Part shown: in pieces, positions 18,573 to 41,207 of the stretch
Position numbering within the stretch: the first letter of the stretch is position 1
Layout of the letters: each line of letters starts with the position of its first letter
NCBI GenBank assembly: GCA_028534125.1
Contig: CM052828.1
Coordinates: 52,204,001-52,268,000, forward strand
DNA length: 64,000 nt
Direction of reading: 5' to 3'
From: Lama glama
Taxonomy: Eukaryota
The notes under the pieces: model-generated
What the model saw: only the letters and a program-made list of their open reading frames with translations
The model's database searches: none
Told to the model about the DNA's origin: nothing
Translations under genes and position numbers: made by a program

Positions 18573-18720
18573 TGGACAAACACCAGCAGAATCGGATTTC
18601 CAGCTCCTGGAGATTGCCCGTCGGCTGGAGATGTATGGGATCCGATTGTACCCGGCTAAGGACCGGGAAGGTACTAAGATCAACCTGGCTGTGGCGAACA
18701 CAGGAATTCTAGTGTTTCAG
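18573..18720 (+). CDS. FARP1: FARP1 coding exon (~exon 8): [49 protein letters not shown]
   Basis: tgtcag / gtaaga; 148 nt, phase 2->0; FERM signature LEMYG. Confidence 0.97.
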
Positions 18721-19189
18721 GTAAGAGCGTTTAGAGGCCTGCTTGGTTCCCTTGGCAATGGAGAGATAAGAGTTGGTCCCTAGACTCTGATTCCATGCTG
18801 GGTGGTCCCAGCCAAGACCTCTGATTTTAGTTGTTTTTTAGGTGAATAGGGGAAAACTGACCTTGTCTTGGGGTTTCCCGTTTCTTCCCTTGCTCTCAGC
18901 TTCCCGATTTGATTTCCTTTGCCCTGGGTCTGGTTGGGGAATCCACAGTTACAGATTTGTTGGCATTTATTGACTTTGTAGGACCACAGAGATCTGGATC
19001 TCTCTGTGAACCTTTGCTGGGAACATAGTGTAATGGAGTCAAGATTTCAGACCCCCAGATAAACACCGTTTTCACACTTAAATATGGTATTCATCTGGTC
19101 TTTTTTTTTTAAACCTAATTTGTGTTTTACCTAAGTCAGCTTATTTGTGGTTTCACATTTACCTAACTTAAAAGTGTAGCATGTTTGAA

Positions 19190-19620
19190 GCAACATGAAT
19201 GGACCTGGAAATTATCATATTGAGTGAAGTAACTCAGACAGAGAAAGAGGAACATCACATGATATCACTTATATGTGGAATCTTTAAAAAATGATACAAA
19301 TTCTATTTACAAACCAAAAACAGACTTACTAACATAGAAAACAAACTGTAGTTACCAAAGGGGAAAGAGCGTGGGGTCGGGGGTGGTAAATTAGGGGTTG
19401 GGGATTATCGGACACACATTACTATATATAAAATAGATAAACAACAAGGACCTACTGTATAGCACAGGGAATGATATTCAACTTCTTGTAATAACATATA
19501 ATGAAAAAGAATTGAAAAGAAAAATATATATATATGTGTGTGTGTGTATGTATAACTGAATCACCTTGCTGTACACCTGAAACTAACATTGCAAATCAAC
19601 TGCACTTTAATAAAAAAAAT
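19190..19620 (+). mobile_element. L1 LINE 3' end
   Basis: atggacctggaaattatcatattgagtgaagtaa...gacctactgtatagcacaggga...aataaaaaaaa. Confidence 0.85.
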
Positions 19621-19809
19621 TTTTAAAGTATAGTATGCACTTGGAAGATTCATAGAAACTACAGCCACGTCCTGCTGTAATTTTGCAGCAGAACACCTAC
19701 AGCTTATGGATCCTTACCTGTGTTTTGTATAAGGACATGACATTGTACTCGGAAATGCGTGCCCGCTTGGCCACACTGCTGCTGTACTGTTTCATTGATT
19801 AGTGCATCT

Positions 19810-20130
19810 CTTTTTCGTAACAACTCCGTTGAAGAATTGACACACAATAAAATGTACACATTTAAAGTGTAACCATTCTTAAACATAAGTTCTCAAATAT
19901 ATATATCCTGTGAAAACATCAATGAAATCAAGACTGTGAACGTATTCACCACCCCAAAAGTTTCCTCAAGACTTTGGTTTTTTAAATTTTTTTTAATTGA
20001 GATATGGTTGATTTATAATATTATATTAGTTTCAGGTGCACAACATAGTGATTAAAGATTTTACAGATGATACGTCACTTAAAGTCGTAAAATACTAGCT
20101 ATGTTCCCTGTGCTGAACAACATATCCCTC
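19810..20130 (-). mobile_element. Short L1 3' fragments
   Basis: tttttaattgagatatggttgatttataatattatattagtttcaggtg is a reversed L1 3' terminus. Confidence 0.6.
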
Positions 20131-21584
20131 AAGGCTTTTGTTTTAAACAAAAGTGGATAAATCCGTGCTTCGGTTTCAAAGGGGCAGGAAGAAAGCTTCT
20201 GCCTTCTTCATGAAAGACGGTCAGCTTTCACCCAGCTCTAAAGGTGTATGACCTGAAACTTTTTTTTTGAGCTCTGCCGGGTTGGGTTGCATTTCCTGCT
20301 TTGTATTTTACTGAAATAACCCCAGGGATTCTCTGTCCCTGTATCAGTTATTTATGATGGATGTTAATTGCCTCAGATTCATGGCCCAAGAGCAGTTGAG
20401 GCTGAGTTTCCTGTGGGACACTAGGGAGTGACATTTTGAGAGCAGTGTGGTATTTGAAGAGCTGACTGTCCCTAACAGTTAACGACCTACAGAAATAATC
20501 CTGGAGTCCCTGATGAGCAAAAGGACAATAAAACAATGTAGTTTTCAGTCCTGCTGTTCCATTTCAAAATTAAAACCCTTAAAACATTTCTAAAAATCAT
20601 GGAGATAAGAAGTGCCTGACAGCTGAATTAATTTGCTTTGATTGTGTTGGATAGTCTGAATGTTGAGAATTGCTCAGGAGTGCAGTCACGTACAAAGCCT
20701 GTATCTGGGAATTCATCTTCCGGTCGGTGCCTAATTGCTCCATCCTAACCAATTTAAATAAGTGGTCCTGGTGTTCAAGTGGGCTCGAGAGGCATTCTCA
20801 TTTCGGCTGAGATGACAGGGCAGATGGGGGCTGGTGTCTGGCAGCTCTCCGCTGGTATTCCACCACGACCTGGCGAGCAAAGGTGCCAGTGTGTGTCCCT
20901 CCTGGAGACAACTCTGGCCAGGAAGACACCTGGGGGTGGGGCCTCCCCTCCCCAGACCTTTCCGAGCTGGAAGCCCCCTGGGCATGGGAGCCAGACCAGT
21001 GTGGACAAAGCGGGTGGTGGCTCCCTGCTGTGTTGCCGCTGTGGATATTAAGCACGGCTGCTGGTTCCGGCCCACACCCAGGAATCTCGTTCTGCCTCAG
21101 TAACTGTGTGATTTGGGACACATTAAAATCCAGCCACGCTGCAGTTTCCACATCTGTAGAAGGGAGATAATAAATCCAGCTGGCTGGGTTTTGTGTCAGG
21201 CTTGACGAGATAAGGTCTGTAATGGACTCGGGATGGCACCCGGCACCCCGTTGGTGATGGTCGCTAATAATTGTTTGTGGTGGTTGCCATGATTTTTATT
21301 TGTATTTATCTTTCTCTTTAGCAAGCCCCTTGGCCAGCCTCTTCTCTCCCTGGCAGCAGACTCAGTCTGAACGCCGAATCATATAATTAGTGAGAAGTAC
21401 TGATCCAGGCAGGGAACGGGTGTCATCCCAGTGCTGCGGGTCCTGGGATTTCTCCAGCAAGAGGCATCCTTCCGAGCAGTCTCACATCAGTCCTTTCAGC
21501 TCCCTGGGAACAAAGCCAGCCAGTCCCCAGTCATGTTGCTTCTTACGTGTTTCCAGGCTCACTGGCTGATACTTTCCTTCTCAG

Positions 21585-21680
21585 GGCTTCACTAAGATCA
21601 ATGCCTTCAACTGGGCAAAGGTGCGGAAGCTGAGCTTCAAGAGGAAGCGCTTTCTCATCAAGCTCCGCCCGGATGTGAAT
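21585..21680 (+). CDS. FARP1: FARP1 coding exon (~exon 9): [32 protein letters not shown]
   Basis: tctcag / gtgagt; 96 nt, phase 0->0; FERM F3 lobe. Confidence 0.97.
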
Positions 21681-23046
21681 GTGAGTGCCTCAGGGAAGGA
21701 GGGGGAGGCCTCCCACTGGAGCGCGTCCTGGAGCCCGACTTGTGGCCAGCAGCCATGTCTGCGTGTCCCCATGGTGTATCCTGATGCTCGGTCACTCCCG
21801 AGCTGTCACCATCAGTAGGCAGAGGGTGAAGAAGCAGCAGCACAGATGTGTGCCTGGGAGGGGCCCCGCCCTGGGCACCTACAGGCTGTCCCCTCCTCCA
21901 GCCTCGGCCACCTTGAGACCACGAGCAGCATTCTGCCGTGTTCCAGGCCTGTCCCTTCCCGCACAGCAGCAGTCCCTGCTCCTGTCCCCAACCCCTGACA
22001 GGGCATTCTCACAAGCTAACCAGGCCCCGATGTAACACACATGGCACCTGGTCAGAAGGAAGTGAGCCGCATCTTCCTCGGCCATAAATGGCGATGGAGG
22101 AGACAGGTGGCGTATTGCTAGTGTCCCCAACCAGACCTGGAACGCTTTTCCCCAAGGAAAAAAGAATGATGACAAATGGCAGTTCAGGCTTAGAGTAGCT
22201 GGGCCGCATGAAGGGTGAAATAGGCTTCTCTGGCCTGAGGTGGGAAGCAGACCCCCATGGTAAGTGGTTTTCTAAGTGAAAAGTGTTGTGAGTCCCAAAG
22301 GCTGTGTTCAAGTGACGAACTGCACCACAGCGTGTCAGTAAGTGGGGGCGGCCCTGCCCGGACCTGCGAGATTCCCCGCGAGGAGCTGGAGCGGCCGGGA
22401 GTGTTCAGGCCTGTGGTCACTTCTGTTGATGTAATATGACCACTTCAGTTGGGAGCCTGCAGTCTGGGAGTAGAAAATGGCCATATCCCCTTTCCCAAAT
22501 CAAAGGACATGAATTTTTCAGCCTTGAGTGATACTTTTGTGCTCCAGAAGAAGTGCTCATTTCCTGTCTGGGCCCTGGGGCCACCTGGAGGCTGGAGCCG
22601 TATGCTTTTCAATGGAGAAAAGGCTTAAGAGCAATATTCAAAGTTGGCCTGAGCCATGAGGGAGGAAACAGGGAGAACTGGGTTTCAGTTACTTTAAGGA
22701 GGCCAAAAAGGAATTTCAGAACATTTTTTTTAAGAAGGAGATATAAGCCAAGTAAACAGAGTTTGTTTATGAATTCTGTCAAAGGAGATGCTGTGACTTC
22801 TGCTGAGTCCACTTTGTGTTTGTTCCAATAAGGAATTAAGTGGGGAGGAAAATGGTTGAACAATGAGTAGACTTTGTCATTAGGGGCAACCGTGTTTTAC
22901 TAAACAAGTGAATTCATGGTCAGGCAATAATAAAATACACAGTTGCAATTTTACTGGACACATTTATTTTCTGCCCCCTTTTCCGTTTTTCAGCTGCATG
23001 CCTATGGGTAATGGAAAAAAACCAAAGGGCTATTTTCTCTTTCTAG

Positions 23047-23210
23047 AGCTCATACCAGGATACCTTGGAATTCCTAATGGCCAGTCGGGATTTCTGCAAG
23101 TCCTTCTGGAAAATCTGTGTTGAACATCATGCCTTTTTTAGACTTTTTGAAGAGCCCAAACCAAAGCCAAAGCCTGTTCTCTTTAGCCGGGGGTCATCGT
23201 TTCGGTTCAG
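23047..23210 (+). CDS. FARP1: FARP1 coding exon (~exon 10): [55 protein letters not shown]
   Basis: ttctag / gtgagg; 164 nt, phase 0->2; FERM end (WKxCVEHHxFFRL) and start of FA. Confidence 0.97.
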
Positions 23211-23898
23211 GTGAGGCGTCCCCTTCACATCTCCCCGGTTGCCAGGCGATCGTTTTCCCCGCGACTTGCCTCGGGGAAGAGGTGGCTTCCAAGAGGTTTG
23301 GTTGGTGGGGTGCGTGCTCCGTCGTCCCAGCAGGCTCCTGGCAGACCCTCGGTGTGTTCCGTTTGAACGTTGGCTACCCAGCCTCAGTCAACTCCAAAGG
23401 GGCCAATTCAGAAAGGATTTTCTTTCTCTGTAGAAGATAAAGCACCTTGTTAACACTTGGTGTACCTTTCCCGAATGCTGCATAGACTTGCCCTTCATTA
23501 GTTCGATTTCTCACCTGTTCTTTCAGCAGATCTTTGAGTATCTGTTGTCAAATTCTGTCGAGGCTTTGGGGATATGCAGTGAACACAACTGTCCCCACCT
23601 TCAGGAAGTAGACAGACTCTTAGGATGGTTGCCTCACAACCAAACACAGGATTACTAAGTGGTTTAGTTAGAAACTTTTTCTGTTATTGATAAGGGAAAT
23701 ACCAAGGGACAGAATAAACACAAAAGCATGCTTTTCCTTGGCGCTGCTTCTATTCCTGGCTGGCTGAGAAAACCCACTCACCTCCCAGTTCTGGAGGGAG
23801 GGGAGGTGAAGATGGCAGAGTGCTGGGGTGGGGGAAGCGGTGTTAAATGAGAATGCCTTAGTTGTCTCCCCTGCTTCTTCTCGTGCTCTTCCTTTTAG

Positions 23899-23967
23899 TG
23901 GTCGGACTCAGAAGCAGGTTCTCGACTACGTTAAAGAAGGAGGACATAAGAAAGTGCAGTTTGAAAG
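23899..23967 (+). CDS. FARP1: FARP1 coding exon (~exon 11): GRTQKQVLDYVKEGGHKKVQFER
   Basis: ttttag / gtaaga; 69 nt, phase 2->2; FA domain (SGRTQ...FER). Confidence 0.97.
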
Positions 23968-24261
23968 GTAAGAGAAGGTTCGATGCTTCTTCCAATTTGA
24001 GAGGAGTCATCCTCTCAAGGGAGCAGTGCCCTGCTGCTCGGCACCGCTTCCCCCAGGCTCGGGGAGTTAGAGCCTCGGCCAGTTCAGTGTCAGGAACCTC
24101 TGAGGGCCTGGGGACACTCACTGGAGGATCAGATGAGACTCGAAGAATGGACTGAGAGTACCAAGCGAGGGAGAAGAGGAAACCAGCAGAGGGCAGGGCT
24201 AGAAGAGGAACAGGAGGTTACAGAGGGGATAAAGCACTGTCCAAACTTGCTCATCAGTGAG

Positions 24262-24345
24262 TCCTTAAGTATTGGAGGATTTGAATTGGAAGTATTTTCT
24301 ATATCCTTAAGTATTGGAGGATTTGAATTGGAAGTATTTTCTATA
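24262..24345. repeat. Perfect 42-bp tandem duplication
   Basis: tccttaagtattggaggatttgaattggaagtattttctata twice (24262-24303, 24304-24345). Confidence 0.95.
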
Positions 24346-24394
24346 AACTTCTTTTTTTTTTTTTCAATAAAGTTTGAATGAAGAGAAGCAGGAT

Positions 24395-24630
24395 TTATCA
24401 TTGTTAGCAAATGCTTATAGCCCTTACTCTGTGCCAGGCACTGTTCCGAGCTCTTTACACACATTAACTCCTGTGATCTCCACCCCAAGCTCTGGGAGGT
24501 CGGTGCTATTTTATTCTCTTTTTAAAGATGGAGACGCTGCAGTTCAGAGATGCTAAGTAACTAGCCCAGGTCTCAGAGCTGGTAAGCGGCCCCTGGTCTT
24601 CCAACTACAGGGGCCACTACTCTTAAGCAT
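24395..24630 (-). mobile_element. MIR SINE
   Basis: cttactctgtgccaggcactgtt...agttcagagatgctaagtaactagcccaggtc. Confidence 0.7.
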
Positions 24631-25879
24631 TGTAATGCCGCCAGAGAGTCAAAGAGAAAAGAGTAAAGGGGTGAAATGATCCTGTGTCAAGCACTGTTTA
24701 GTTGCAAGTGTGTGTTTATTTGTCATAGCGTTTTTCTTTCTTCACTCTAACACATTTAAAAAAATCACAGCAAGACAGGATGCATGTTCTACCATGTTCC
24801 TACTACTTAGAATCAAGTGTTAACATTTTAGCATTGGCTTTGAGAGTTTTATTTCTTCTTTCCTTATTTGTAGCTATTGTGGTTACAGATGTAGCTAAAC
24901 CCCTCTTTAACCAACTGTCTTCATTATTTCCCTCCTCCCCTCCCCAGAGGTAACAACCACCTAATGCATGTTACGTCTGTTGTAAACATTCATGCATCCA
25001 AAAAGAACAGGCAGCATTGCTTTGGGGGTGTCCTTTTTCATCTGACTCCCAGTTGATAAACATTCAGGTTGTTTGGTGTTCTGTTTTGCGTTTGCTGAAA
25101 CAGACGCACTGCTGTGACCATCCTTGTCTGTTTCTCCTGATGCAGATCTGAGGTTTCTCCCTCCCTATATCCAGAAATGTAATAAGGAAGCTTATTTGCA
25201 CGCGTATCTAAATGGAACAAACACCTCATCATTTTCTTGGACGATCCACAGTTAATCTTTCAAGGATCATATAAGAAGTGGCCCACCTCTCTGTGACTCA
25301 GAATATGGGTGCTTGGTGTGGGGCACACACTAAGGGAAGGAAAAGATTAGAGAAAGAGGGGTTGATGGCGTGAAAAAACACTGTTGAGTCTATAAATTCA
25401 TTCCTGGGGCAGCCTGGTCTCTGATCTGAGTGCTGTGAAGGAGTTCGCTGCTCAGTGGCAATAGCCTCTATTATAGAACTGATCTGGAAAATTAGACCCA
25501 AACCACACACTGATTTCATATTGTTAGACCATTGCTTACAATTCAGAGCGTCCGCAGGCCCAGCCAACTTCTCCCTCCACTGACATTTCCCAGAACTAGA
25601 AAGTTAGTGTTCGGAGGCTGGTGCTCCTGACAGGCTGGCCCACCGCTCCAGCAGGAGCTGGCAATGGCTGAGAGCTTTGTCAAGGCTGAAGCAACCCCTG
25701 AATCCTGCGAGTGCTGTGGGGTGGATGACTGGGTCTATTTCCAGGGCACATTTATCCAAGCTAGCTTGGGTGCCTTCACGGTGGAGGAAGTGCCTTGGAA
25801 CAGTGGTTATTTTTCAATTAAAAAACAAAACGAAAAAACAACTCACCTAACTTTAGCTGTCTTCTGTGATTTCTCCCAG

Positions 25880-25955
25880 GAAACACAGCAAGATTCATTC
25901 CATCAGAAGCCTTGCTACGCAGCCTACAGAGCCGAATTCAGAAGTGCCAAAACAA
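25880..25955 (+). CDS. FARP1: FARP1 coding exon (~exon 12): KHSKIHSIRSLATQPTEPNSEVPKQ
   Basis: tcccag / gtcagt; 76 nt, phase 2->0. Confidence 0.93.
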
Positions 25956-27049
25956 GTCAGTGATGATGGTGTTCAGTATTACAGCTCTGTCTGTCACCAG
26001 ACTTCCTCTGCTGAGCCCTGTGTCGCCTAGCATGCTCTTGGGTTCTCTGTCCTTCCCCTCAGGGGTGTTGTATGGAGGAGAGCCAGACACAGCCTGAGCT
26101 CTGGGTCCTTCCCCAGCTGACTCCCTCTCCCGTGCTCTCGCCCCAGGGAAGTTGGCTCTGTTGGCCTGAACTCAGCTTAGGGCTGGAACCACCCATGGGA
26201 GCCAGAGCTGAGCCCACCCTCCAGCTAAAGGGCTGCGCTTGTGCGAAGAGGTCAGGACCTACTTCGCGAGTGCTGGGTGCAGCTCCCCTTGGGTGCCAGG
26301 GTCAGAACCTTGTGCTGGCACTGGACTGGGCGGTGAGTTCCCAGGGCTCAGATTACAGGGCAGCAGCCACAGTGGCAGCGAGACACATGATCACTCTTGC
26401 CCAGCGGGTGGCCCGAGCTCGTTTTCCCTGGGGTTGGTATCTGGATGAGTTTTCAGGGTTTTCTCTGTGGTAGAATAAGAACTTTGTTGGAGAAGAACAC
26501 GAAGGTGATTTCATTGTGTGAATCTGAAGTAAGTCCTTAACCTGCCCATCGTACCCTTAGGAATCCAGTCAAAGAAATCTTTGTCATTTGTCTGAAGTCC
26601 ATGTCAGCCGGCCTTGGCGGGGGTGGGGAGTGGTCCGTGATATCTTCTTTTCCTCCCCCTGCCGGCGCCTCCTCAGGAAGCCCCCTGTGGGCTGGAAGGG
26701 CTCCCTTGTTGCACAGAAACTTTAGAAACCCAAGGTGAGACTGAGTCCCGGAAATGAGAGGCGCTGCCTCACCTGTGCTGCTGGGGACTCCGCAGTATCG
26801 GCTTCCACACCGTGAAAGAATATTCTGGATCCTGACCAGACACCCCGGGGAGTGCCCTGGGGGTTGCCCACTTACTGCCAGGGTGCCTTGTTCTAAGCCG
26901 GTGGAGGGCGGGCTTTATGCGGCAGTCGTTTGGGCCGCTTGATGCTGAAGGAGGTGCTGTTAAATTAGCCCCTGCGTCTCTCTCTAACCCTCTCCCTTTT
27001 CTCTTCATCTCCCCGCTCCTTTTCTTGCACCACCCCACCCCCGCCCCAG

Positions 27050-27299
27050 TCTCAGCAGAGTGCCAGCCTTACCCTCGGAGAAGGTGCTGAATCCCCAGGC
27101 AGCCAGAGCTGCCAGCCAGGAAAGGAACTGAATGTTTCCGCCCAGGAGAGCGGGCCGCCACGCAGCCCCGCTGCACAGAAGAGCCCGGCAGGGAGCACGC
27201 CGGCCGACGGAGCCGTCAGGGCGACGGTGGAGGAAGAGGAGGAGGTCGTTAAGGACAGGACCCAGCAGAGTAGACCTCAGCCCCCGCAGCCAAGCACAG
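27050..27299 (+). CDS. FARP1: FARP1 coding exon (~exon 13), linker: SQQSASLTLGEGAESPG...EEEEEVVKDRTQQSRPQPPQPST(G)
   Basis: ccccag acceptor; weak donor CAG|gtccag; 250 nt, phase 0->1, matching the phase-1 acceptor at 41020. Confidence 0.92.
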
Positions 27300-28276
27300 G
27301 TCCAGCATCCAGGGCTGCTAGAGGCAGCAGCGCTTCCATTCCTTTCATTGACTGCAGTGACGTAGACAGTGAATCCGACCTTCTCAGGGAACACGCATCC
27401 CAGTCACGGTCCCAAACAAATGACAACTATGAGGGTGATTTGACCAGTGGTGTTTATCTGCTCTCCCGGGAGGAGAGGCGAATAGAAGCTAGGCATTCTA
27501 GGGCTTCCCCGCACTCTGTGAAGTCCTCCCGGCCTCCTTCCAGAGAATTCCTTGACGATGATTCGGCAGACATATCCTTTGATGTGAGCGGGAGCCCCAG
27601 ACTCCCAAGACATAGCTCTCTGATAGATGAGATGTTCGGGGGCTCAGGCAGCCACAGTCCCTTGGCCACCCCCTTATCTCCCAGCAGCAGAAGCTCAAGT
27701 CCAAATATGCCTTGGGGCCGGACCAGGTCTCAAGGCTATGTTTCCGAAAACGGACATGACCCTAGAGAGAGAAGTGTGGGAGAAGGTACTCTCCTAAGCC
27801 CGGGTCCTCATTACGAAAACTGTTCTCCCGTCTCACAAAGGCCATATTTAAAGAGTCTTCCCGGTGGATACAATAAGTCAGAGACAGATCCACTCATTCT
27901 TAGCCGGGGAGCATCAACCCCAGAGGCAGCAGGTAGGCTTGACGGCCCCGGAGAGGGAGGAGTGGTCGGCCCGGCTGGCTTGGAAGGCAGGACGCTGGCT
28001 AATGGGACCCCTCTCGTGGGTCCAGCCTCCAAGACCCCCACTGCGCAGGCAGCCCATACCAGTCGCCTGGGAGACCAGCTGGCCCCCCTGCAGGTGACCG
28101 AGGGCTCCACCAGCAGTGGGACTGAATCCAGCGATTCAGACTCTGAGATGGTGAGCCCTCTGAACCAGCCCCTCGTGTTTGGTAATCCAGCCGTGCTGGG
28201 TTCCCCCTGCGTGGAGAGGAATAAGAAGTCCCTGAGTGGCCTGCGTGTGAAGGAGGAGAGGGAGGAGAATGAGTGA
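27300..28276 (+). CDS. FARP1: Putative in-frame extension of exon 13 (alternative terminal exon), 325-aa Ser/Pro/acidic tail giving a DH-PH-less FARP1 isoform
   Basis: ORF 27227..28276 (349 aa) is the longest in the window, shares the frame of exon 13, is GC-rich and repeat-free, and ends at TGA 28274-28276. Confidence 0.65.
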
Positions 28277-29329
28277 GGAGACTCGAAGGCATGTCTTCAA
28301 GTGTCGGGAGCCTGGGTTCCTGAGTCCCGGCTTTCGGTGGAGATGATCTGTGCTAGCGACTTGTGCATTTTTAATTGACATCTGTTAGAGGAAGTTTGGG
28401 GCAGGCACACGTTGGATAGGGCATGCCTGACTTCTCAGAGAAACCAAACTTCACAAAGCCTGACAAATTACCAAGAGCTTGTTTATCTTTCTGGTGGAAG
28501 GCTAGAAAGAAATACTTTATTACGAATCTGATCAGTGTGTAGCGTGTCGTATTTATGTGGAAATTTTCTTGTATGTTCAGTTCTGTAGGCAGATCACCCT
28601 CCCATTTGGTTGAGTCTGGGGACTGAAATAGCACTGAGACCCCAGGAAAAGTGTTGGTTTTACTTTTAACCCCTTCTTGAAAAGGGGGGCTGCTTTTCTG
28701 TGCCTCGTAAAGTGAGAAACTGACAAAATTCAAGGCCAAATGTAAGTTGATTGCTAGTTGAGGTGAAGTGTTTGTGAAATCTTAGTTAAGACTAGTGAAC
28801 ATTTTAATCAGAAGCACGTGGAATTACTTCTTTGCAGACTTTGTATGAAATGATATAAAAGTCAGAATCTTCAGGAGCTGTAAGTGACATGAGATTGCTG
28901 GTTCGGTTTGGGTTTGGTTTGGGTTTGCTTTGGTGGGTCAAATTTGTTGGTTATGTTTGAAGAAGCTGTAACTGGTGAGCAGAACCTCTTGGTGAAGCAC
29001 AGACATGCTGTCAGGCGATGGTGCAGGAGGAAGTAGGTACTGTTGTCACCGGGAGGTTGGCAGACTGAATGCTGCCTTTGAATAGTGCACAGCACAGAGA
29101 AGGGCCGAGTCCCAGTCTCATTGCCTTGGGTTGAGTTTTACGCACATTCTTAATGTTCACTCTCTTGGGAACAGCAGCTTCTCTCAGAAGCTGACTTACG
29201 GCTGCTTCTCTGTGCAGGAAGAAAGAAAGTGAAAGTAGCAAGAAGTCTGGCTTCTTTTTAAATCTTGACCACCTACACCAGTGCCTTTCACCCAGCACTC
29301 CTGCATTTCAGATGAAGAGCCTGGTTTGG

Positions 29330-29485
29330 ACTTGCTTTGTGTCTCAGCCTTAGCTGCACCTTGGAATCACCTAGGAATTTAAAAATTGGCATTGCCCGAA
29401 CCCAGACCCTAGAAATTTCGTTCTCATTGAGCTGGGGTGCCTCTTGGGCTCCCCAGATGGCTCTGCTAGGCAGCCAGGGTCACTC
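29330..29485. mobile_element. MER5-like hAT-Charlie fragment
   Basis: ctcagccttagctgcaccttggaatcacctagga...cccagaccctaga. Confidence 0.5.
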
Positions 29486-32400
29486 CTCAGCCAAACATGA
29501 TTGCCTTCTAGACTCTGGTGGAGTGTAAGGAAAGCGCTGGCTGAAATTCTGGCTTGCTTGCTGAGTAGGAAGAGGGTCACAAATGAAGTGCTTTTCTTCA
29601 TGCCTGTTATTTGGTACTTTTTAGTCTTCGGTACTTTTTTAAAAAAAATAAATTGTAGAGTAAAAGTTTTAGATCCTAAGTAACCACAAAATCCTCGAGC
29701 AGAGTTGTAACAACGATACATCTGATGTCTGCCATGCCAGTGGCCTTAGTAAAACCTCATCATGTGGCTTTGTCATGCGGAGGGGCTGATCATGGGTAGG
29801 AAACGGAGTAGAATTTGGCAGCAGTATTTCACGAACAGAAATATTGACTGACCTTGTGGTTCACAAGTGATTATCTGTCCACATGAATGTCCAGAGGTTG
29901 GTTTTAAAGATTCTGAAAACTTTAATCCATTTTTATACACACTTCTGCTCTGTCTTCCTAATCATTTGATTCAGTGCATGATTGATGAATCAAATTGATT
30001 ATCGGATAGCTTGAAAGATGTTCATTGAAGTAGTCTATTCATGTCTTGCTTTAGAATTACATATTTAACAGTCACAGAATTTGAAAGCCAGAAGGGACCT
30101 TAGAGATCACCTAGGTTAAACCTCATTTTACAGATGAGAAACTTTCTTCCAGTGAAGAAGTCACAGAAGTCATACAGCTGTTGCATGACAGAGCTAGAGC
30201 CAGAAAGCTGGTCTCCGGACTTCAGCATTTTACTCTATGTGACGTCTGGATGCAATAGGTCCTTTTAGATTTAATACTTTATTTTTTGAGACTCTTGTAT
30301 GCATTAATAATTAAAATCATGTGGCAACTAGGAATCCTGTAGACTTGACTTAGGCAATGACAGTCCTACTAGGCAGGAAGACCGGCTGCTTTTTTATATT
30401 GCGGGGTTTTGCATTATAACACATTTTTGCATATTCTGTTTTGAACTTAGAGAAAGATGTCAATTTGCTGTAGAAAAATTTACTTAAATGGGAGTGTAGC
30501 GCAGTGACACTTGGAATCCTGTGGTTTATTTGTGAAGGTGGTCTGTTGAAATGAGTTTTCTTTTTACTTCTAATCATACAGCAGTCTGATAATGAAATAC
30601 GAATGAGCAAAAGGGTTGAACTTACCCAAAACAAAATGTGAATCATCGCATGTAAACCCCCAAAGCAAAACACGCTCCAGTAATTATTTTGTTTGGCTTT
30701 TTCCCTAAAGAAGTGATTTTTATCTGAAGTGTTTTAAAAGCAGCTGATCAACAGTGGTGTCCCCTGTCCTGCACTGACAAGATTTTCCACTGTCAGGGTC
30801 ACTGGTAGAGTTTTTCTCAGGTTGGTTTCATACCAGCCACGTAACTGAATTTCTGCTTCTCAGCCAGCGTTTATGAAAGTGGCAATCCTGGTGTGGTTAA
30901 TGGTGCTTAAAAGAAAGGAGGGGTGTGGTTTGTTCAAAAGCCACTTACCCTGAAGTGCTGAGAATACTCACTAATTGCTTCAGGGAGCACTTGCCGAGCG
31001 CTGGTGGGACAGTCAGCCTCCCGCCAGCATTCTTTGGTCCTGGCGGTAGAGCCAGTTGACCGAGGTGGAGAGGTCAGGGAAAGCCACGAGTGTCCACCAT
31101 CCCACCTTCTGTGCCCTCTGCTTGTGAGACTCCGGTCCCGAGGTCCTTAACTGGTCGCTGGAATCTCACTGTGTGGCGTAACAAGGGCAGGCAGATCAGA
31201 GAGGGGGTCAAGTATGAGGAATAAGCAGTGGAGATGAGACACCTGTGAATTCTTGCAGATTTCTGAAGGGTTTCCTAAGACCTTCCGCCAGTTTTTCTAA
31301 GACAAGAGCTAGTGTAGGGTCTCCTGCATCAACAGGGAAGCCAAGGCTTCAGATCACGGCTGCTCTCTGAAACAGTGTCTTAGGGGCTTGGATAGAAGAC
31401 CAGCTCTATAGAGAAATAAATCTTCATGCCACTCAGGGCTACTCCAGGGCCTCCTTGCACTAATATCTTTTGTTAGATAGTGTTTCAAAATATGTAAATT
31501 ATAGAACCTTTTGGGTTGATTTTTATTGCTGCTTGTTCAAGGCAATATAAAAATGCAAGAAATTCTCTTAGCGTGAAGAAATGCGTTTAATGAGTTCCAG
31601 AACTTAAAACGGATTGCTCCAGCTCCTTCAGCAGTCATCTGTGTGACCTTGACAACCTTTTATTAGACAGGCATTTAATTAAAGGAAGTCTGTGGGCCAG
31701 ATTCTTCCCCACACATGTGGTTCCTAGTTGGAAATTCCTCACAGATTTATTTTCTATGCTGCTGTGGCCTGCACTTAAAATGTGAATTCTTCCAGTTTTA
31801 TTCTCGAGAATTTCTTTGAAGATTCGAACCAAGCAATGCTGCTTTAAGAAAAAAAAAAAAAAAGCTAGACCCTGCAAAACCAAAATGCAGCGTGAGCCTC
31901 TGGAAATTTCTACCAAGTATATGAAATCGGCCTGTCCTCAGTTGAATAGGAGCTCCATTTGCATCTTAGCTCTGGAATCATTTTGATTGTGCTGTAAAGC
32001 AGTTCCTGAAAAAAAAAAAAAAGGAAACACTGCAAATACTAAGCTGTCGTTTTAAGCTTTGTTAAAACTGTTGTGAATGTGCACAGCTCCCTTTTTTCCT
32101 AACTGTAATCAGTGTTCACATTCAAATGCTTTTAATCAACGTTTTCCACTTAAAATGCTCTTCCATATTTCAACACAGTATGGGTTTGGTGCAATTGGAA
32201 TCATTAGTGAGTAACTGAGTTCCAGGTAGGACCAACCTTCAATTAGGAAATTTGGGGGCCCCTTCATCATTAGATTTATTTTGAGTTTATCTGCTTCTGT
32301 CTCGATCACTCTTCTTTACCAGGCCCTTGTTACTAGCCAGAACGTCAGAGCTTTCCAAGTTGTATCCCCAAGGAAGGCTCTTTTTCCCTGGATTTTCTCC

Positions 32401-32488
32401 TTTGTAGTCTGTGAATTTCCCTCCTCTGATAATCAGGAGCTTAGTTCTCTAAGGTTGGCCTTCCTCTAGTTTCCTGGAGATGCGTCTA

Positions 32489-32790
32489 CAGTTGATTCTT
32501 TTTTTTTTTTTTTTTAATTTTTCTTTAACGGAGGTCCTAGGCCTTGAACCCAGGACCTCATGCATGCTGAGCATGGGCTCTACCACTGAGCTTTATCCTC
32601 CCGCCTTTCAGCTGACTCTTGAACAACACAGGTTTGAACAGTGCAGGTCCACTTACACTCAGATTTTTTTCAGTAGTAAATACTGCGCAGTGCAAGGTTA
32701 GTTGAATCTGCAGATGCGGAAGTGCAGTTACACATGGAGGATGGACTATAAACTTCACGGGGACTTTCCTCTGCTCAGAGGGTCAGCGCT
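32489..32790. mobile_element. Tigger2/MER8-like MITE interrupted by a SINE
   Basis: TA-cagttg start; cttgaacaacacaggtttgaacagtgcaggtccactta terminal motif. Confidence 0.7.
32501..32608 (-). mobile_element. vic-1-type SINE
   Basis: PolyT + gaacccaggacctcatgcatgctgagcatgggctctaccactgagct. Confidence 0.85.
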
Positions 32791-35781
32791 GTATTTTATT
32801 GCTGCCAATTTTACAAATCAAACTGCAGAAGAGTCCTTCCATGCGGTCTCTGCAATAGATTAAGTTTCTCTGAACCTGAAAGAGGTGAACATTTCAAAAC
32901 AGCCCGTCGCTGGTAGCTCTTGGATGAGTTTTACATTCAGCCGTGGTAGCCAAGTTCATAAGAACGTGTGGGAGGATTGGTCCTAGTGAGTGAACGTATA
33001 TAAGAAGGAAGTGATTAAAGAACTTGACTCTGGCGACATTTAAAGAATTTCCTGGCCCTGCTTCTTCCTTGTTAGTTTAATTCCATCTGTTTCTGTTTAG
33101 CTGAACAAAATGTAATACAGGGAAATGGGGTCTCTAGTGCACACCGTGCATACCTCTAACACCAGTTGCTGGTATTTAACTGAAGCCATGACTTTTAGAT
33201 CAAAATAAGGCAACCCCTTAATGTAGCAGCTCCCTTTTTATTAAAAATAACAATAATAATGAAAAGCAAAAAATATACATATCCATGATGACTTGACCTA
33301 GCGTTGTCTGCTCAAAGATCAAAAGTGGCCTGGTTGCCACCTGTTTGGATACATACTTGAAAAGGGTTACATCGTGTTTCCTGGGGGTAACCTAGGGATT
33401 TTGAATATTTCCCCCCATGAACAAAAGTTGCAAATGCTGATTTGTGCGTCATGTATATGTTTGGGAGGAGGTGGATAGAGTCTTGTTTTTGAAAAAGGGT
33501 CTTCCTTCATAAAATTAACAACACATTAGTCCCAAAAAACAGATGAAATCTACTTCCATCCTGGGGAACTTTTTTTTTTTCTTTTCTAGCAAAAGCAGTT
33601 AAACACCCTGGTAGAAGCTAGGGTTGAATTAGAAAATTCTCCTTTTCCTGAAAGCTTTAGAAGTTGAGTAGACTGTTTGTTCAGGACGGTTTCAGTGTGG
33701 ATGGCCTAAGTGATACAGATGTCACAGCTTAGCCTTGGAAACGGCCTCGGGCCGTAGTCCTGGGTTAGCACTTCTGGTAGGAGGCAGCTCATTTGCATCT
33801 TCATGTAGGTTCTAGATCAGGTTGTTCTGATAGGTCTTGGGCTGGTTTTTATATTTGAAAGTAGGGAGAATTCAATTAACTGTTGACATGGGATAGCTGA
33901 TTTTGTATAGTTGAGAGCCCGGGTGAAAAATCAGCTGCCAGGCAAATGCTGTTAATGCATCATGGAAATGGTATGGAAGAGTCCTGAGCTTGCTGCTGGG
34001 GCCAGAGGCAATGATTTTGGAATATTGAAGAGCAGTTAGAAATCACTGCAAAATGCAACACAAACCAAGGGTACTAAGGAGGATAGGAGGGAGTGAGGAC
34101 TGTGTGCACGTGTGTGTGTGTGTGTGTGTAGAAAGCATCGAATAGTGATTAACTCTACTTTTGAGTAAGAGGTAGCGGTGGCAATGGTACTGGGAGTTTG
34201 GAGGCAGTGATTCTGCTTTATTCTAAATTGGGGTTGTTAACTGACTCTCAAATAGGAAACAGTGGAAGGGTCATTTTGGAGCCTGGTGGTGGTGCAGTGA
34301 CGGGCCTGTCATTATTCACAGATGACCTTTCTGGCTCATGAAACTGGGCTGACGATTGCTTTTTCCTGGGCCTCAAAGTTCCTTTGTGAGAAATGAAGCA
34401 TTTGTCACTCTGCCTGCGGTGATTTATGGAAAGACCAAAGACAGGTTTTCCTTAGTCGAGAACACACACCCGCTGCTCTCTGCACACGCGCCTGAGTGGC
34501 CGGTGGATTCAATCCCTCACCTTCTTTCTGCCTGGAAAGTTGCCCTGAAAACCTGACTAACCCACTCGCACAAGCTTGGCCTGTATTATTAATCCAGTTC
34601 CTTTCTGTTCTCTCTGTGTGTATATTTAATATGTTATTAAAAATTTTCTAATATGTGGAATTAATTTTAAAATAGAAAAGGCTGGGGACTTCATTCTCAT
34701 TTTTGTCATTTGTTGGATAAATTCAAAAGGACATTTTTCTGTTGTGCCATGGTATGCCCTGTTGTGTCAGCATGTACCTATCCAAGAGAAAAAGCTTTTT
34801 TTCAACATTCTGTCTTTATCCTCAAAGCATGGTGTACCTTCTGTTCCCTGCATTGTTGGAGCACTGTCTGATGTCTTTTTTTTTTTTTTAACACAACTGA
34901 ATACCAGTTTGTACTTTGGAATACCTGTTTCCTCTAGAATACAGTGATCCTGGTCTGTAAACAGCAGGTTTTAACAGGCGGGCATCCTGGGCGGTCACAC
35001 TTGGTGACACCATATTTCTCTAAAGGTGGGGAAACAGAAGGTGAACAGAAGACTTCACTTTTCTGATCTCATCTTCTACAAGCCTGCTCTTTGCACTGTG
35101 TGCCTGGAGTGGGTGGTGTTTGGACGCGAGCAGGATCACTGTAGTCTGGGAGAGGGCTCATGGAAACAGAGAGTATCTGTGGTCAGGCTTACATAGGGGG
35201 AGCCCGGACGGCCAAGCAGAGGATTGGCTTCTTGTTTGGAATGGGAACATCTATTCAAATGGGACTAGAAAACTGGACGTCGTTTGTAAAAGGATTTAGC
35301 TGTGTCTTCACTTTGTTGGGGAGTGCGGGTAGGTGGAAATAGAAGACCTCATCTAGCATAGCCCCAGCTGGCTTCCTCACCGCCGATAAGCTGTTTTTCA
35401 GTTTGCAGTCTTCCCACGATGTAGGCTGTCACAGATACTGTCTGGTTTCATCTTCTCTCCACGGCCTAAGAGTGCAGTATCACAATAAAGCATGGATCTC
35501 TACCACCAGGAAGGTGGCCGGCTTCTCCGATAACAATGAGCTTGGTGATTCTTTTAAGCATGGAAGGCCAAACTCATGTAACAAGTGTATGCACGGTGTT
35601 AATATCTCTTGTTAATCTCAACTGAAGAGGCTTTTACTTGTCCTAACAGGTATCTTGCTGTAAAAACTGTCAATTGTAACTGTGCTTTCCCTCTGATGGC
35701 TGAAGCTTTATCCTGAGTACAAGATGGTATTTTTCATTGGTACGAAGCACCATGTTCCCCAATCCAAACAATGCCACTGCT

Positions 35782-35832
35782 GCCGCCGCCGCCGCCGCCA
35801 CCGCCACCGCCACCACCACCACCACCACCACC
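35782..35832. repeat. Compound (GCC)n/(ACC)n trinucleotide repeat
   Basis: gccgccgccgccgccgccaccgccaccgccaccaccacc... Confidence 0.95.
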
Positions 35833-36134
35833 TTCAAACAGAGAAGAATCCTTTATCTTTTCCCCATAAGCAAGAACAAGCTAGTGCATTCCCTGTCATT
35901 TTTCCATTAGCATTTCTCTTTATATTTTTCGGCAAGTCGCCTTGCTGTTGCTTTTCTGAATTGCTTGATGATGAGTGGTGACACTGATGTTTAGCAGCTT
36001 GTAAAACTCTTCCTAAAGGAACTTGGTCTAAGAAGTACATACCTTACCTGCAACAACCCAAGTTACCAAGAAGACCCCACTGCTATGATGGGTAATCGTA
36101 TAATCTGGTTTTTCTTGTGGAAACTTGTCATTTC

Positions 36135-36140
36135 AATAAA
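36135..36140 (+). terminator. Candidate polyadenylation signal AATAAA
   Basis: Context ttgtcatttcAATAAAacagtgacag; upstream TGTA elements (e.g. ~36000), U-rich and GU-rich sequence downstream. Confidence 0.4.
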
Positions 36141-37529
36141 ACAGTGACAGCTCTTTTCCCATATTCCACTGTGGTGGGACCCAGCTTAGTCATCAGACTA
36201 GAGTGAATCCTGCCTTTTCTGGAGATGACCCGTAGTTAATCTATACAACACTGACCTTTTTTTTTTTTTTCCATCCGATAACTGGCTTTCAAATGCAGAT
36301 GGTCTCCAGGGAGAGTTCACGGTTTTCTCTTTCAGAGGGGTATCGTGAACTTTAAAAAGAGCCTTTTAAAAATAAATGAGAACCCCCCTCTGTAATGTAT
36401 TTCCTCCGCGTGCCTTTGCAGCACCTTCTGGGTCCACAGAGATGCGATCTCCAATATTTTAGAACCAAGTAACAGGAGACAGGTCATCACAGATGAGTGG
36501 CATGTAGAAGTTTGCCACATATATAACTTCAGGGGGATACTGAGGAATCCACACAGATACTTTTTTAGTAACTGTACTTTCTAAAATTTTGAAAAGAGGA
36601 CTTGAGAAAGCAGTCAGCATCCTCATTTTCATCAGTATTCTTATTCTCAGATATTTTAATATTTAGCAGATCTCTGGGTTACTATTTTTTAAATTGCCCA
36701 ATTTTATAGTTCCCTCCTTAACAGGAAAAATAAAACTTATGGAATTAAAAATAGGACGTGCCAAAGAATGCAAAAAAAAAGCGGGGGGAGGCCCAGGTAA
36801 AAACATAGGGCAGGTGCAACGAAGTATTCAAAATGCCATTTTTATTACTTGAAAAATAGATAAAAATTCTCATCTCCCAGACTTGCGTGCGTCTGTTCTG
36901 CCTTTAATATTGTCAGAGGAGGTGGGTGGTTACTAGGCGCCCTGTGCCCAGTCCTAAAAGGGGAAGACATGCATGAGTTTGGCTGGTTGACTCTGTTCCT
37001 GCTGTGGATGTAGCTCTGGTGAAAAGCTGGTTAAGAGATGCTGACGTCTAGGTGAGGCTGCAAATCCAGCTTCCCCTGTGCAGCTGGGAGAGAAGAATTA
37101 TGAAGTTCTCTTACATTCTAAAGATAAAGCAGCTAAGCTAGTTTCTGGGCTGGGTGATAAATGGAAATCCATAAATATGGCAGTGCTAATTTCAAGTTAC
37201 ATAGTTGTTTGTGCCATGAGACTGTGTACACTTAAAGGGGTTTTTAAAAGCAATTACCATAAATGCCTCCCTCGAGAGTAGTATGTTTAGTCCGTGGGAG
37301 CGACATAAACTCAGGCCTCTTGATACAGATTGAGGGTGGGGAGGGGGACATGGAGGTTGGCTGGCGGAGGGGGGGGGGGAACTGTCATGACGTTATTTGG
37401 AAGAGGTGAGGAATTTGAGAGTTATTAATCAGAAATACAGCTGAATGCCTAAAAAATGCAGAGCATTTTCTGAAAAGGGGGAAAAAGTTTTTTAAGCCAG
37501 CATTTTGTTTTATTTAGGTTTTGTTTGTT

Positions 37530-37657
37530 GGTTGGTTTTCTTGGGGGGAGGTGGAAGTAATTAGGTTTATTTATTTATAGAGGAGGTACTGGGGATTGAA
37601 CCCAGGACCTCATGCATGCTAAGCATGCACTCTGCCACTTGAGCTATACCCTCCCCC
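37530..37657 (-). mobile_element. vic-1-type SINE
   Basis: ggtactggggattgaacccaggacctcatgcatgctaagcatgcactctgccacttgagctataccctcccc. Confidence 0.85.
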
Positions 37658-41019: not shown

Positions 41020-41207
41020 GCTCCCTGACTGGTAGCCCTCACCTTTCAGAGCTGTCCATCAACTCGCAGGGAGGAGCCGCCCCTGCCAACGCCATCCTGT
41101 CCCCCAACCTGAGCCCCGACACCAAGCAGGCATCTCCCTTGGTCAGCCCACTGCTCAACGACCAGGCGGGCCCTCGGACGGACGACGAGGAGGACAGCCG
41201 GAGAAAG
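41020..41207 (+). CDS. FARP1: FARP1 coding exon (~exon 14): GSLTGSPHLSELSINSQGG...SPLLNDQAGPRTDDEEDSRRK
   Basis: aaacag / gtgtga; 188 nt, phase 1->0. Confidence 0.95.

What the first reader, a model, noticed from the sequence alone, without database searches (positions are those of the whole stretch)
27050..28276. Hidden 325-aa in-frame extension of FARP1 exon 13: a GEF-less FERM-FA isoform
Seen in the sequence: the canonical donor at 27299/27300 is weak (CAG|GTCCAG). Reading through it, the frame stays open for 325 codons (GPASRAARGSSASIPFIDCSDVDSE...KEEREENE*) to TGA at 28274-28276. This is by far the longest ORF in 64 kb, repeat-free and GC-rich, and GC drops soon after the stop. A rough estimate of chance openness at this GC content is ~1e-5. 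Inference: a composite internal/terminal exon switches FARP1 between the canonical FERM-FA-DH-PH-PH protein and a ~796-aa FERM-FA protein with a disordered tail (length assumes a human-like N-terminus). That product could act as a scaffold or a competitor for FERM partners. I do not recall it being characterised, though it may exist as a predicted or retained-intron model.
Basis: partly seen in the sequence, partly recalled or inferred. Interest (0 to 1): 0.9.

Follow-up and report, generated by a model that had tools for sequence, protein, structure and literature searches.

The report
Known GEF-less FARP1 tail isoform
The long open frame that runs past the FARP1 exon-13 splice donor is real, conserved coding sequence for a FERM-FA protein with a disordered tail and no GEF domains, but this isoform is already in public gene models and was reported with peptide evidence in mouse brain in 2021.

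Summary
The frame is open for 435 codons (26969-28276), and the next longest in the window is 198. The 325-codon extension past the weak donor at 27300 ends at TGA 28274-28276. No dinucleotide shuffle stays open.

The window carries FARP1 FERM/FA exons upstream and DH exons downstream, and exon 14 starts at 41020. The extension is homologous over its full length to tails of FERM+FA+tail proteins of about 750-820 aa, named FARP1, from elephant shark to mammals. The stop position is conserved among eutherians. The extension is at least as conserved as the constitutive part of exon 13. Short assembled contigs in other species carry upstream exons spliced to exon 13 plus the tail, so they derive from mRNA.

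It is not hidden or new. Ensembl/UniProt and NCBI hold such models. Li et al. 2021 (PMC8248162) reported the 800-aa mouse isoform with nine intron-specific peptides.

Three things are added here:
- In-phase distal donors give long FARP1 forms with the tail inserted.
- FARP2 has a homologous tail isoform.
- The tail is predicted to be disordered.

The scan also lists this same stretch under note s1-861978.

The parts
25878..25955 (+). FARP1 exon 12 (end of the FA region), spliced to exon 13 in mRNA-derived ORFs of other mammals
   Evidence: tblastn of the lemur and marsupial models. P0160 and P0178 begin with this exon's peptide joined directly to the exon-13 peptide.
27019..27049 (+). Polypyrimidine tract and acceptor AG (27048-49) of exon 13
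   Evidence: Sequence. The orthologous protein junction ...EVPKQ|SQQ... is seen.
27050..27299 (+). Canonical exon 13 (83 codons plus 1 base; linker between FA and DH)
27300..27301 (+). Canonical 5' splice site GT, weak, phase 1. It joins to exon 14 at 41020.
   Evidence: Approximate PWM score 0.45 bits. Junction STG|SLTG in full-length models.
27299..28273 (+). 325-codon in-frame extension: Ser/Gly/Pro-rich tail, predicted disordered
   Evidence: open frame, shuffles. (full-length homologues). (pLDDT 47.5). (conservation at or above that of constitutive exon 13).
27323..27373 (+). Conserved motif GSSxSIP[FY]IDCSDxDSE at the start of the tail
   Evidence: Nearly invariant columns in alignment A1. 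Coordinates.
27554..27637 (+). Conserved blocks DDDxAxISF and PRHSSLIDEMF. The first block also aligns to the FARP2 tail.
   Evidence: A1. hhalign of A1 against A2: probability 94.7%, E 6e-8.
27584..28033 (+). 450-nt in-frame internal intron ('exitron') with GT...AG ends, missing from a 97%-identical ORF of a close relative
   Evidence: P0003 skips exactly this stretch. Boundaries GAT|GTGAGC and ...CCAAG|.
27872..27904 (+). Conserved motif N[KR]S[ED]TDP[LF][IV]LS (invariant N, S, T, D, P, L, S)
   Evidence: A1. Coordinates.
28020..28021 (+). Candidate distal donor, phase 1, at the position where the mouse 'isoform 2' and Rhynchocyon models leave the tail
   Evidence: Inferred by position only; its PWM score is poor (-3.5).
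28076..28147 (+). Conserved acidic Ser cluster ...EGSTSSGTESSDSDSE
   Evidence: A1. Coordinates.
28182..28183 (+). Distal donor TTG|GTAATC, phase 1, inside the conserved PLVFGNP motif. It is used in models that join ...PLVFG to SLTGSPHLSEL.
   Evidence: Glossophaga 1338-aa and Dasypus X1 models. PWM score 4.0 bits.
28274..28276 (+). TGA stop of the tail isoform, at the same position in other eutherian tails
   Evidence: Alignments run to the last residue on both sides for 10 or more eutherian proteins.
29647..29652 (+). First AATAAA after the stop (1.37 kb downstream). Further hexamers follow at 30310, 31415 and beyond. Usage is unknown.
   Evidence: Hexamer scan only.
41020..41207 (+). Exon 14 (acceptor AG 41018-19), the start of the segment that leads into the DH domain

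Best explanation
Window 27050-28276 is FARP1 exon 13 in its long, composite form.

The proximal donor at 27300 is weak. When it is used, the exon joins exon 14 at 41020 and the canonical FERM-FA-DH-PH-PH exchange factor is made. When it is skipped, translation continues for 325 codons to a conserved TGA. The transcript presumably ends at a poly(A) site in the former intron. The product is a protein of about 790-800 aa with FERM and FA domains, a disordered Ser/acidic tail carrying short conserved motifs, and no GEF or PH domains.

Distal donors in the same phase, inside the extension, can instead splice the tail into full-length FARP1.

Shown here:
- the open frame and its improbability by chance;
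- the gene identity and the exon junctions;
- full-length homology of the tail from cartilaginous fish to mammals, with a conserved stop among eutherians;
- constraint at least equal to that on the constitutive linker;
- mRNA-derived contigs of the form in other species;
- a homologous tail isoform in FARP2.

Taken from the literature: translation in mouse brain.

Inferred:
- use of the form in this genome;
- intronic polyadenylation as the way the transcript ends;
- a GEF-independent scaffold role, by analogy with the C. elegans FRM-3 FERM-FA tandem that recruits LIN-2/CASK.
For: Open frame: 435 codons, and 0 of 2000 shuffles stay open.

Gene identity: FARP1 exons flank the ORF and the junctions are mapped.

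Homologues:
- phmmer against 1.84 billion proteins gave 26 hits, 9 below 1e-30. They span query residues 1-324 in fish FERM+FA+tail proteins.
- Named FARP1 FERM+FA+tail models come from Callorhinchus, Xenopus, birds, a gecko, Sarcophilus, Prolemur, bats, pig, hamster and Pongo.
- The window's tail is 66-80% identical to other eutherian tails, and the alignments end at the same stop.
- The tail is as conserved as, or more conserved than, constitutive exon 13 in 13 of 15 comparisons. Examples: Pavo 55.9% against 43.4%, shark 40.3% against 31.6%.

Transcript evidence in other species:
- Complete FERM+FA+tail ORFs sit on contigs of 2.7-4.5 kb: P0169, P0184, P0077, P0089, P0099, P0124.
- P0160 and P0178 begin with the exon-12 peptide fused to exon 13 and the tail.
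- P0003 shows a GT-AG internal splice.

Literature:
- Nine intron-specific peptides support an 800-aa mouse isoform (PMC8248162).
- In C. elegans, FRM-3A and FRM-3B arise by alternative splicing, and the FERM-FA tandem is sufficient for function (PMC7260190).

Other:
- The tail is predicted to be disordered.
- The FARP2 tail is homologous.
Against: There is no direct RNA evidence for this genome.
- The 0.41 word share in RNA-seq runs is ambiguous. It fits 1.2 kb held exactly, or the whole 3 kb held at about 97% identity by a relative.

The poly(A) site is not mapped; only hexamers were scanned.

The eutherian tail has lost the C-terminal ...SFGSLQLDEE...FSDEDGxxVFSC ending that is conserved in other vertebrates. 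This could mean relaxed constraint on the terminal form in this lineage.

The mouse peptides were not checked here for whether they lie downstream of the distal donors, so they may not separate the terminal form from the long-insert form.

The tail matches no Pfam family and no solved structure, so its function is unsupported by any domain.
Confidence: 0.8

Rival explanations
1. The extension matters mainly as an alternative internal coding segment. Distal in-phase donors (for example GT at 28182, or near 28020) splice the tail into full-length FARP1, inserting about 240-295 residues between FA and DH. On this reading the stop-terminated form is a minor by-product.
For: Models with the tail inside FERM...RhoGEF-PH proteins:
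- the 1278-aa record named mouse 'isoform 2', Glossophaga (1338 aa), Rhynchocyon (1283 aa), elephant and aardvark X1, armadillo X1;
- fish and frog models of 1290-1420 aa.

The window keeps a phase-1 donor at 28182 inside the conserved PLVFGNP motif.
Against: - Sequence downstream of the last shared donor is strongly conserved in non-eutherian vertebrates, down to a common ...VFSC end. Only the terminal form explains this.
- The stop position is conserved among eutherians.
- Complete FERM+FA+tail ORFs sit on short mRNA-like contigs.
- The two readings do not exclude each other.
Confidence: 0.3
2. Unproductive intron retention. The read-through RNA is a nuclear-detained or degraded by-product of a weak donor, and the open frame has no protein function.
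For: - The donor is weak.
- Li et al. classed the event as intron retention.
- The tail has no recognisable domain.
Against: - The frame has been kept open with conserved motifs from shark to mammals, and also in the paralogue FARP2.
- Conservation is at or above that of the constitutive linker.
- Nine peptides were reported in mouse brain.
Confidence: 0.04
3. A chance open frame in GC-rich intronic DNA.
For: GC is 0.58 locally, which lowers stop frequency.
Against: - 0 of 2000 shuffles stay open, and the composition-based probability is about 1e-5.
- Homologues cover the full length at E down to 1e-109.
Confidence: 0.01

Closest known systems
Mouse Farp1 'intron-retained' 800-aa isoform (Li et al. 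2021, Alzheimers Dement 17:984, PMC8248162) and the FERM+FA+tail FARP1 models in Ensembl/UniProt and NCBI (e.g. Prolemur simus 783 aa, Molossus 795 aa, Sarcophilus 785 aa, Xenopus tropicalis 811 aa, Callorhinchus 751 aa)
   Same: - Same gene and same exon-13 read-through.
- Same tail, aligned end to end: 66-80% identity to eutherian tails and 40-56% to shark, frog and bird tails.
- Same predicted length class.
   Different: Nothing essential differs; this is the orthologue in another eutherian. The window's tail, like other eutherian tails, lacks the C-terminal ...FSDEDGxxVFSC ending of non-eutherian tails.
Long FARP1 isoforms with the tail inserted (record named Mus musculus 'isoform 2', 1278 aa; Glossophaga 1338 aa; fish 'isoform X2' models of about 1360-1420 aa)
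   Same: They use the same extension as coding sequence, in the same frame.
   Different: They leave the extension at distal phase-1 donors and keep DH-PH-PH, so they are exchange factors with a long insert, not GEF-less proteins.
FARP2 FERM+FA+tail isoform (e.g. mouse D3Z4C0, 795 aa; Strix, Podarcis, Callorhinchus models)
   Same: - Paralogue with the same architecture.
- Its tail is detectably homologous to the FARP1 tail: phmmer E 6e-4 against the whole library, and hhalign probability 94.7%, E 6e-8 over 63 columns.
- Many models and mRNA-sized contigs exist.
   Different: A different gene. The tails share only short blocks, at about 30% identity.
C. elegans FRM-3A / FRM-3B (FARP orthologue)
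   Same: - Alternative splicing gives FERM-FA plus a domain-less C-terminus (FRM-3A), or FERM-FA-GEF-PH-PH (FRM-3B).
- The FERM-FA tandem alone rescues receptor clustering and recruits LIN-2/CASK (PMC7260190).
   Different: Homology of the worm tail to the vertebrate tail was not tested. This is a functional analogy only.
FRMD7 (third vertebrate paralogue; FERM-FA plus a long C-terminal region; binds CASK)
   Same: Same domain order. FRMD7 has no GEF at all, and FARP1 and FARP2 are its closest homologues (PMC3633374).
   Different: [quoted passage not shown]
- The phmmer search with this window's tail returned no protein of FRMD7's length, 714 aa from my own memory.
- No FRMD7 sequence could be obtained through a tool, so tail homology is untested. 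My recollection of shared acidic-Ser and ...GSLQLDEE motifs is only a lead.

Membership tests
FARP1 locus (FERM-FA-DH-PH-PH Rho GEF gene) | FERM and FA exons upstream and DH exons downstream, on the same strand and in order | tested here: met
   tblastn of four FARP1 models gave eight FERM/FA exon matches from 12857 to 25955 at 92-100% identity in the well-aligned exons, and DH exons at 41020-41207, 42404-42496, 43517-43651 and 61911-62030.
FARP1 locus (FERM-FA-DH-PH-PH Rho GEF gene) | Canonical exon 13/14 junction (...STG | SLTGSPHLSEL), with the frame preserved | tested here: met
   The donor at 27300 is phase 1. The acceptor AG lies at 41018-19, followed by GC+TCC CTG ACT GGT....
GEF-less FARP1 FERM-FA-tail isoform (database models; Li et al. 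2021) | In-frame read-through of the exon-13 donor to a stop, with no DH/PH coding | tested here: met
   325 codons to TGA 28274-76. No Pfam domain in the tail.
GEF-less FARP1 FERM-FA-tail isoform (database models; Li et al. 2021) | Tail homologous over its full length to the tails of annotated FERM+FA+tail proteins, with the same end | tested here: met
   Alignments cover residues 1-318 of the tail and end at the last residue of Molossus, Pipistrellus, Sus, Cricetulus and several unnamed ORFs. Pfam FERM_N/M/C plus FA is present on those proteins.
GEF-less FARP1 FERM-FA-tail isoform (database models; Li et al. 2021) | A mature mRNA that joins upstream exons to the extended exon 13 | tested here: inconclusive
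   Met in other species: P0160 and P0178 carry exon 12 fused to exon 13 plus the tail, and full ORFs sit on 2.7-4.5 kb contigs.
GEF-less FARP1 FERM-FA-tail isoform (database models; Li et al. 2021) | Translation (tail-specific peptides) | not testable with these tools
   Literature only: nine non-nested peptides and 244 spectrum matches in mouse brain (PMC8248162).
GEF-less FARP1 FERM-FA-tail isoform (database models; Li et al. 2021) | Poly(A) site downstream of the stop, inside canonical intron 13 | tested here: inconclusive
   AATAAA/ATTAAA hexamers lie at 29647, 30310, 31415 and beyond. There are no 3'-end data.
FRMD7-like proteins | C-terminal region homologous to the FRMD7 C-terminal domain | tested here: inconclusive
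   phmmer with the window's tail found no hit of FRMD7's length (714 aa from memory) among its 26 hits. No FRMD7 sequence was available by reference for a direct or profile comparison.
FARP-family composite exon (shared with FARP2) | The paralogue has a FERM+FA+tail form whose tail is homologous | tested here: met
   P0026 is the bird FARP2 tail. FARP2-named FERM+FA+tail models of 760-803 aa exist in many vertebrates. hhalign of A1 against A2 gives 94.7% probability.

The most novel reading that the evidence does not exclude
The FERM-FA-tail product may be the ancestral, family-wide output of FARP genes rather than a FARP1 oddity.
- FARP1 and FARP2 both keep a homologous composite exon with a conserved stop.
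- C. elegans frm-3 makes the same pair of forms.
- FRMD7 would then be the paralogue that kept only the short form. If so, its 'orphan' C-terminal domain is homologous to the FARP tails.
- The conserved short motifs of the tail would carry a shared GEF-independent scaffold function, for example at CASK-containing synaptic complexes.
Probability: 0.4. Interest if true: 0.5.

Novelty: already known. Interest (0 to 1): 0.22.

Why it matters
FARP1 is studied almost only as a Rac/Rho exchange factor in dendrite growth and synapse formation. A conserved, translated form that keeps the membrane and partner-binding FERM-FA module but lacks the catalytic half could act as a scaffold or as a competitor. 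It would confound knock-down, antibody and variant-interpretation work that assumes a single product.

That point is already in the literature in outline (Li et al. 2021) and in public gene models, so this window adds an orthologue and not a discovery.

- the depth of conservation, from cartilaginous fish to mammals;
- the set of in-phase alternative donors;
- the loss of the C-terminal motif in eutherians;
- the homologous arrangement in FARP2, which points to an ancestral dual-output gene.

Tried and rejected
Tools that gave no data:
Protein-level comparisons were used instead.
Its single call was counted, so there is no read-level evidence.

- No letters of 27228-27318 were sent to any search tool. 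Queries started at 27320 or used other species' proteins from beyond the homologous part.
- Local scripts used 27050-27226 and 27320 onward.
- The one exception is the local donor scan, which read 27290-28276 inside the sandbox only.

Searches with no useful result:
- Pfam and PDB sequence searches of the ORF gave no hit.
- The ESM Atlas gave no usable hit in two searches.

Tests that could not be made or were inconclusive:
- FRMD7 tail homology could not be tested, because no FRMD7 sequence was obtainable by reference and I did not type one from memory.
- The RNA-run word shares were considered as evidence of expression and set aside as ambiguous.

- A record named Homo sapiens (P0164, 797 aa) appeared in the table. 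I did not fetch it or search with it, and I left it out of the local BLAST database and the pairwise comparisons.
- I did not build or search a joined (spliced) protein model of this window's gene. Exons were examined one by one by reference.
Full report
**1. The observation**

- An acceptor AG lies at 27048-49 behind a pyrimidine-rich tract, and exon 13 starts at 27050.
- A GT lies at 27300-01, and the frame continues to TGA at 28274-76.
- The frame is open for 435 codons (26969-28276). The next longest open run on either strand of the 64-kb window is 198 codons.
- The other five frames of the extension hold 6-26 stops.
- 2000 dinucleotide-preserving shuffles gave a mean of 11.9 in-frame stops and never zero.
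- The composition-based chance of 325 open codons is about 1e-5.
- No tandem repeat lies in the ORF.
- GC falls from 0.58 to 0.48 and then 0.45 after the stop.
- On an approximate donor matrix the 27300 site scores 0.45 bits, which is weak. Several other GT sites in the extension score 4-9 bits. The matrix is from memory, so the scores are rough.

**2. The gene**

tblastn of four FARP1 models places FERM and FA exons at 12857-12967, 17565-17732, 18574-18720, 21582-21686, 23047-23208, 23894-23968 and 25878-25955. The well-aligned exons are 92-100% identical to the lemur model. DH-domain exons follow at about 41020-41207, 42404-42496, 43517-43651 and 61911-62030.

Full-length models join ...STG to SLTGSPHLSEL. 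That peptide is encoded from 41020, directly behind an acceptor AG at 41018-19. The split codon is G+GC.

So 27300 is the canonical phase-1 donor of exon 13, and canonical intron 13 is 27300-41019, about 13.7 kb.

**3. The extension is conserved coding sequence**

A phmmer search of the 325 residues against 1.84 billion representative proteins gave 26 hits, nine below 1e-30. Many span residues 1 to about 324.

The named hits include fish proteins with Pfam FERM_N, FERM_M, FERM_C and FA followed by this tail and nothing else: Dallia (817 aa) and Hippocampus 'FARP1-like' (769 aa).

Two word-indexed searches, one with a fish tail and one with a lemur tail, listed FERM+FA+tail proteins named FARP1 from the following:
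- Callorhinchus (751 aa);
- Xenopus tropicalis (811 aa);
- birds and a gecko;
- Sarcophilus (785 aa);
- Prolemur (783 aa);
- two bats (795 and 799 aa);
- Saimiri, pig and hamster;
- a Pongo record called 'FARP1 isoform 12'.

A record named Homo sapiens (797 aa) was also listed.

The window's tail, taken from 27320, is 66-80% identical to other eutherian tails. The alignments end at the last residue on both sides, so the stop position is conserved.

As an internal control I compared the tail with the constitutive part of exon 13 (27050-27226) against the same 15 proteins. In 13 of the 15 the tail is as conserved or more conserved. Examples are bird 55.9% against 43.4%, frog 44.5% against 34.1% and shark 40.3% against 31.6%. 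A FERM/FA exon is 81-100% identical in the 14 proteins that contain it.

Alignment A1 shows short conserved blocks separated by variable, low-complexity sequence:
- GSSxSIP[FY]IDCSDxDSE (27323-27373);
- PRHSSLIDEMF (27605-27637);
- N[KR]S[ED]TDP..LS (27872-27904);
- an acidic serine cluster (28076-28147);
- PLVFGNP (28169-28198).

AlphaFold2 with this alignment gives mean pLDDT 47.5, pTM 0.13 and no secondary structure. The composition is 17% Ser and 71% polar, Gly or Pro. The 'disordered tail' description therefore holds. No Pfam family and no PDB sequence matches.

**4. Transcript evidence**

Direct evidence for this genome could not be obtained.
- The look-up of sequencing runs showed RNA-seq runs holding 0.41 of the sampled words of 26900-29900. 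The canonical exon alone would give 0.08. The figure equally fits the whole stretch held at about 97% identity by a relative, so I do not count it.

Indirect evidence from other species is good.
- Complete FERM+FA+tail ORFs of 762-890 aa lie on assembled contigs of only 2.7-4.5 kb (P0169, P0184, P0077, P0089, P0099, P0124). In this window the FERM and FA exons up to exon 13 alone span more than 14 kb, so such contigs must be spliced mRNA.
- P0160 is the closest tail to the window among full-length alignments, at 79% identity. It and the rodent-like P0178 begin with the exon-12 peptide fused directly to exon 13 and the tail.
- P0003 is 97% identical to the window and lacks exactly 27584-28033. 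That stretch is 450 nt, in frame, and bounded by GAT|GTGAGC and ...CCAAG|. It is therefore a spliced internal intron of the extension in a close relative.

**5. Prior knowledge**

Li et al. 2021 (PMC8248162) reported that a 'lengthy intron' of mouse Farp1 is retained and translated into a novel 800-aa isoform.
- The paper notes that the corresponding human sequence is annotated as an exon of an Ensembl transcript.
- A 2025 review repeats this (PMC12294458).

Together with the database models in section 3, this makes the finding already known. I found no paper that tests the function of the short form.

**6. What the simple switch leaves out**

Several models carry the tail inside full-length FARP1:
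- the 1278-aa record named Mus musculus 'isoform 2';
- Glossophaga (1338 aa);
- Rhynchocyon (1283 aa);
- elephant and aardvark X1 (about 1180 aa);
- armadillo X1;
- many fish and frog models of 1290-1420 aa.

Their junctions show distal donors in the same phase as the canonical one.
- Glossophaga and armadillo join ...PLVFG to SLTGSPHLSEL. This corresponds to TTG|GTAATC with GT at 28182-83 in the window.
- The mouse and Rhynchocyon models leave the tail near the window's 28020 site.
- Afrotherian models leave it earlier.

The window also has in-phase GT sites at 27435 and 27933 with good scores. Whether any of these sites is used in this species is unknown.

The terminal form is not a mere by-product. 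The residues downstream of the last shared donor are strongly conserved in non-eutherian vertebrates, down to a common ...VFSC end. Eutherians have a shorter, degenerate ending but share the stop.

**7. The paralogue**

The weakest hit, P0026 (E 6e-4), proved to be the bird FARP2 counterpart.
- A search with P0026 returned FERM+FA+tail proteins of about 760-803 aa named FARP2. They come from birds, lizards, tuatara, Prolemur, rodents (mouse D3Z4C0, 795 aa), dog, opossum, coelacanth, shark, ray and teleosts, and many lie on mRNA-sized contigs.
- A profile-profile comparison of FARP1 tails (A1) with FARP2 tails (A2) gives probability 94.7% and E 6e-8 over 63 columns, around the ...EEF[LI]DDDxAxISF block.

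The composite exon therefore predates the FARP1/FARP2 duplication.

C. elegans frm-3 likewise makes FERM-FA plus a domain-less tail (FRM-3A) and FERM-FA-GEF-PH-PH (FRM-3B). There the FERM-FA tandem alone localises to synapses, recruits LIN-2/CASK and rescues receptor clustering (PMC7260190).

FRMD7 is the third vertebrate paralogue. It has only FERM-FA plus a C-terminal domain and binds CASK (PMC3633374). Homology of its tail to these tails could not be tested here.

**8. Mechanism and verdict**

Most likely (confidence 0.8), exon 13 is a composite exon with three kinds of output.
- A weak proximal donor gives the canonical exchange factor.
- Skipping that donor gives a stop-terminated, presumably intronically polyadenylated mRNA. 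It encodes a FERM-FA protein of about 790-800 aa with a disordered, motif-bearing tail.
- Distal donors give long-insert forms.

A GEF-independent scaffold or competitor role is inferred from the domain content and from the worm and FRMD7 analogies; it is not shown.

The finding is real and correctly read in outline, but it is ordinary in the sense of being already annotated and published. I score interest at 0.22.

Noticed in passing
window 27584-28033: A 450-nt in-frame internal intron ('exitron') of the extension, with GT...AG ends. It is absent from P0003, a 97%-identical ORF of a close relative. Removing it would take out 150 residues, including the PRHSSLIDEMF and NKSETDPLILS motifs.
   Followed up: partly
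window 28199-28273 (last about 25 codons), compared in alignment A1: Eutherian tails, this one included, end in a short acidic stretch. They have lost the ...PRNKYSFGSLQLDEE...FSDEDGxxVFSC ending that is conserved from shark to birds. The opossum-like and Tasmanian devil sequences keep part of it.
   Followed up: partly
P0026 and (not in the window): FARP2 has the same GEF-less FERM+FA+tail form (about 760-803 aa) across vertebrates, including mouse D3Z4C0. Its tail is distantly homologous to the FARP1 tail.
   Followed up: yes
window 27323-27373: The most conserved tail motif (...SIP[FY]IDCSDxDSE) looks like an FFAT-like (VAP-binding) or acidic phospho-motif. This is an impression from memory only and was not tested.
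   Followed up: no
window 28277-36800: Poly(A) hexamers lie at 29647, 30310, 31415, 31678, 33014, 33240, 34636, 35484, 36135, 36371 and 36729/36744. Which of them, if any, ends the short-form mRNA is unknown.
   Followed up: partly
window 52450-52578: A run of 129 N (assembly gap or masked).
   Followed up: no
window 27005-27394, minus strand: A 129-aa antisense ORF overlaps exon 13. It is the kind expected opposite GC-rich coding sequence, and there is no evidence that it is a gene.
   Followed up: no
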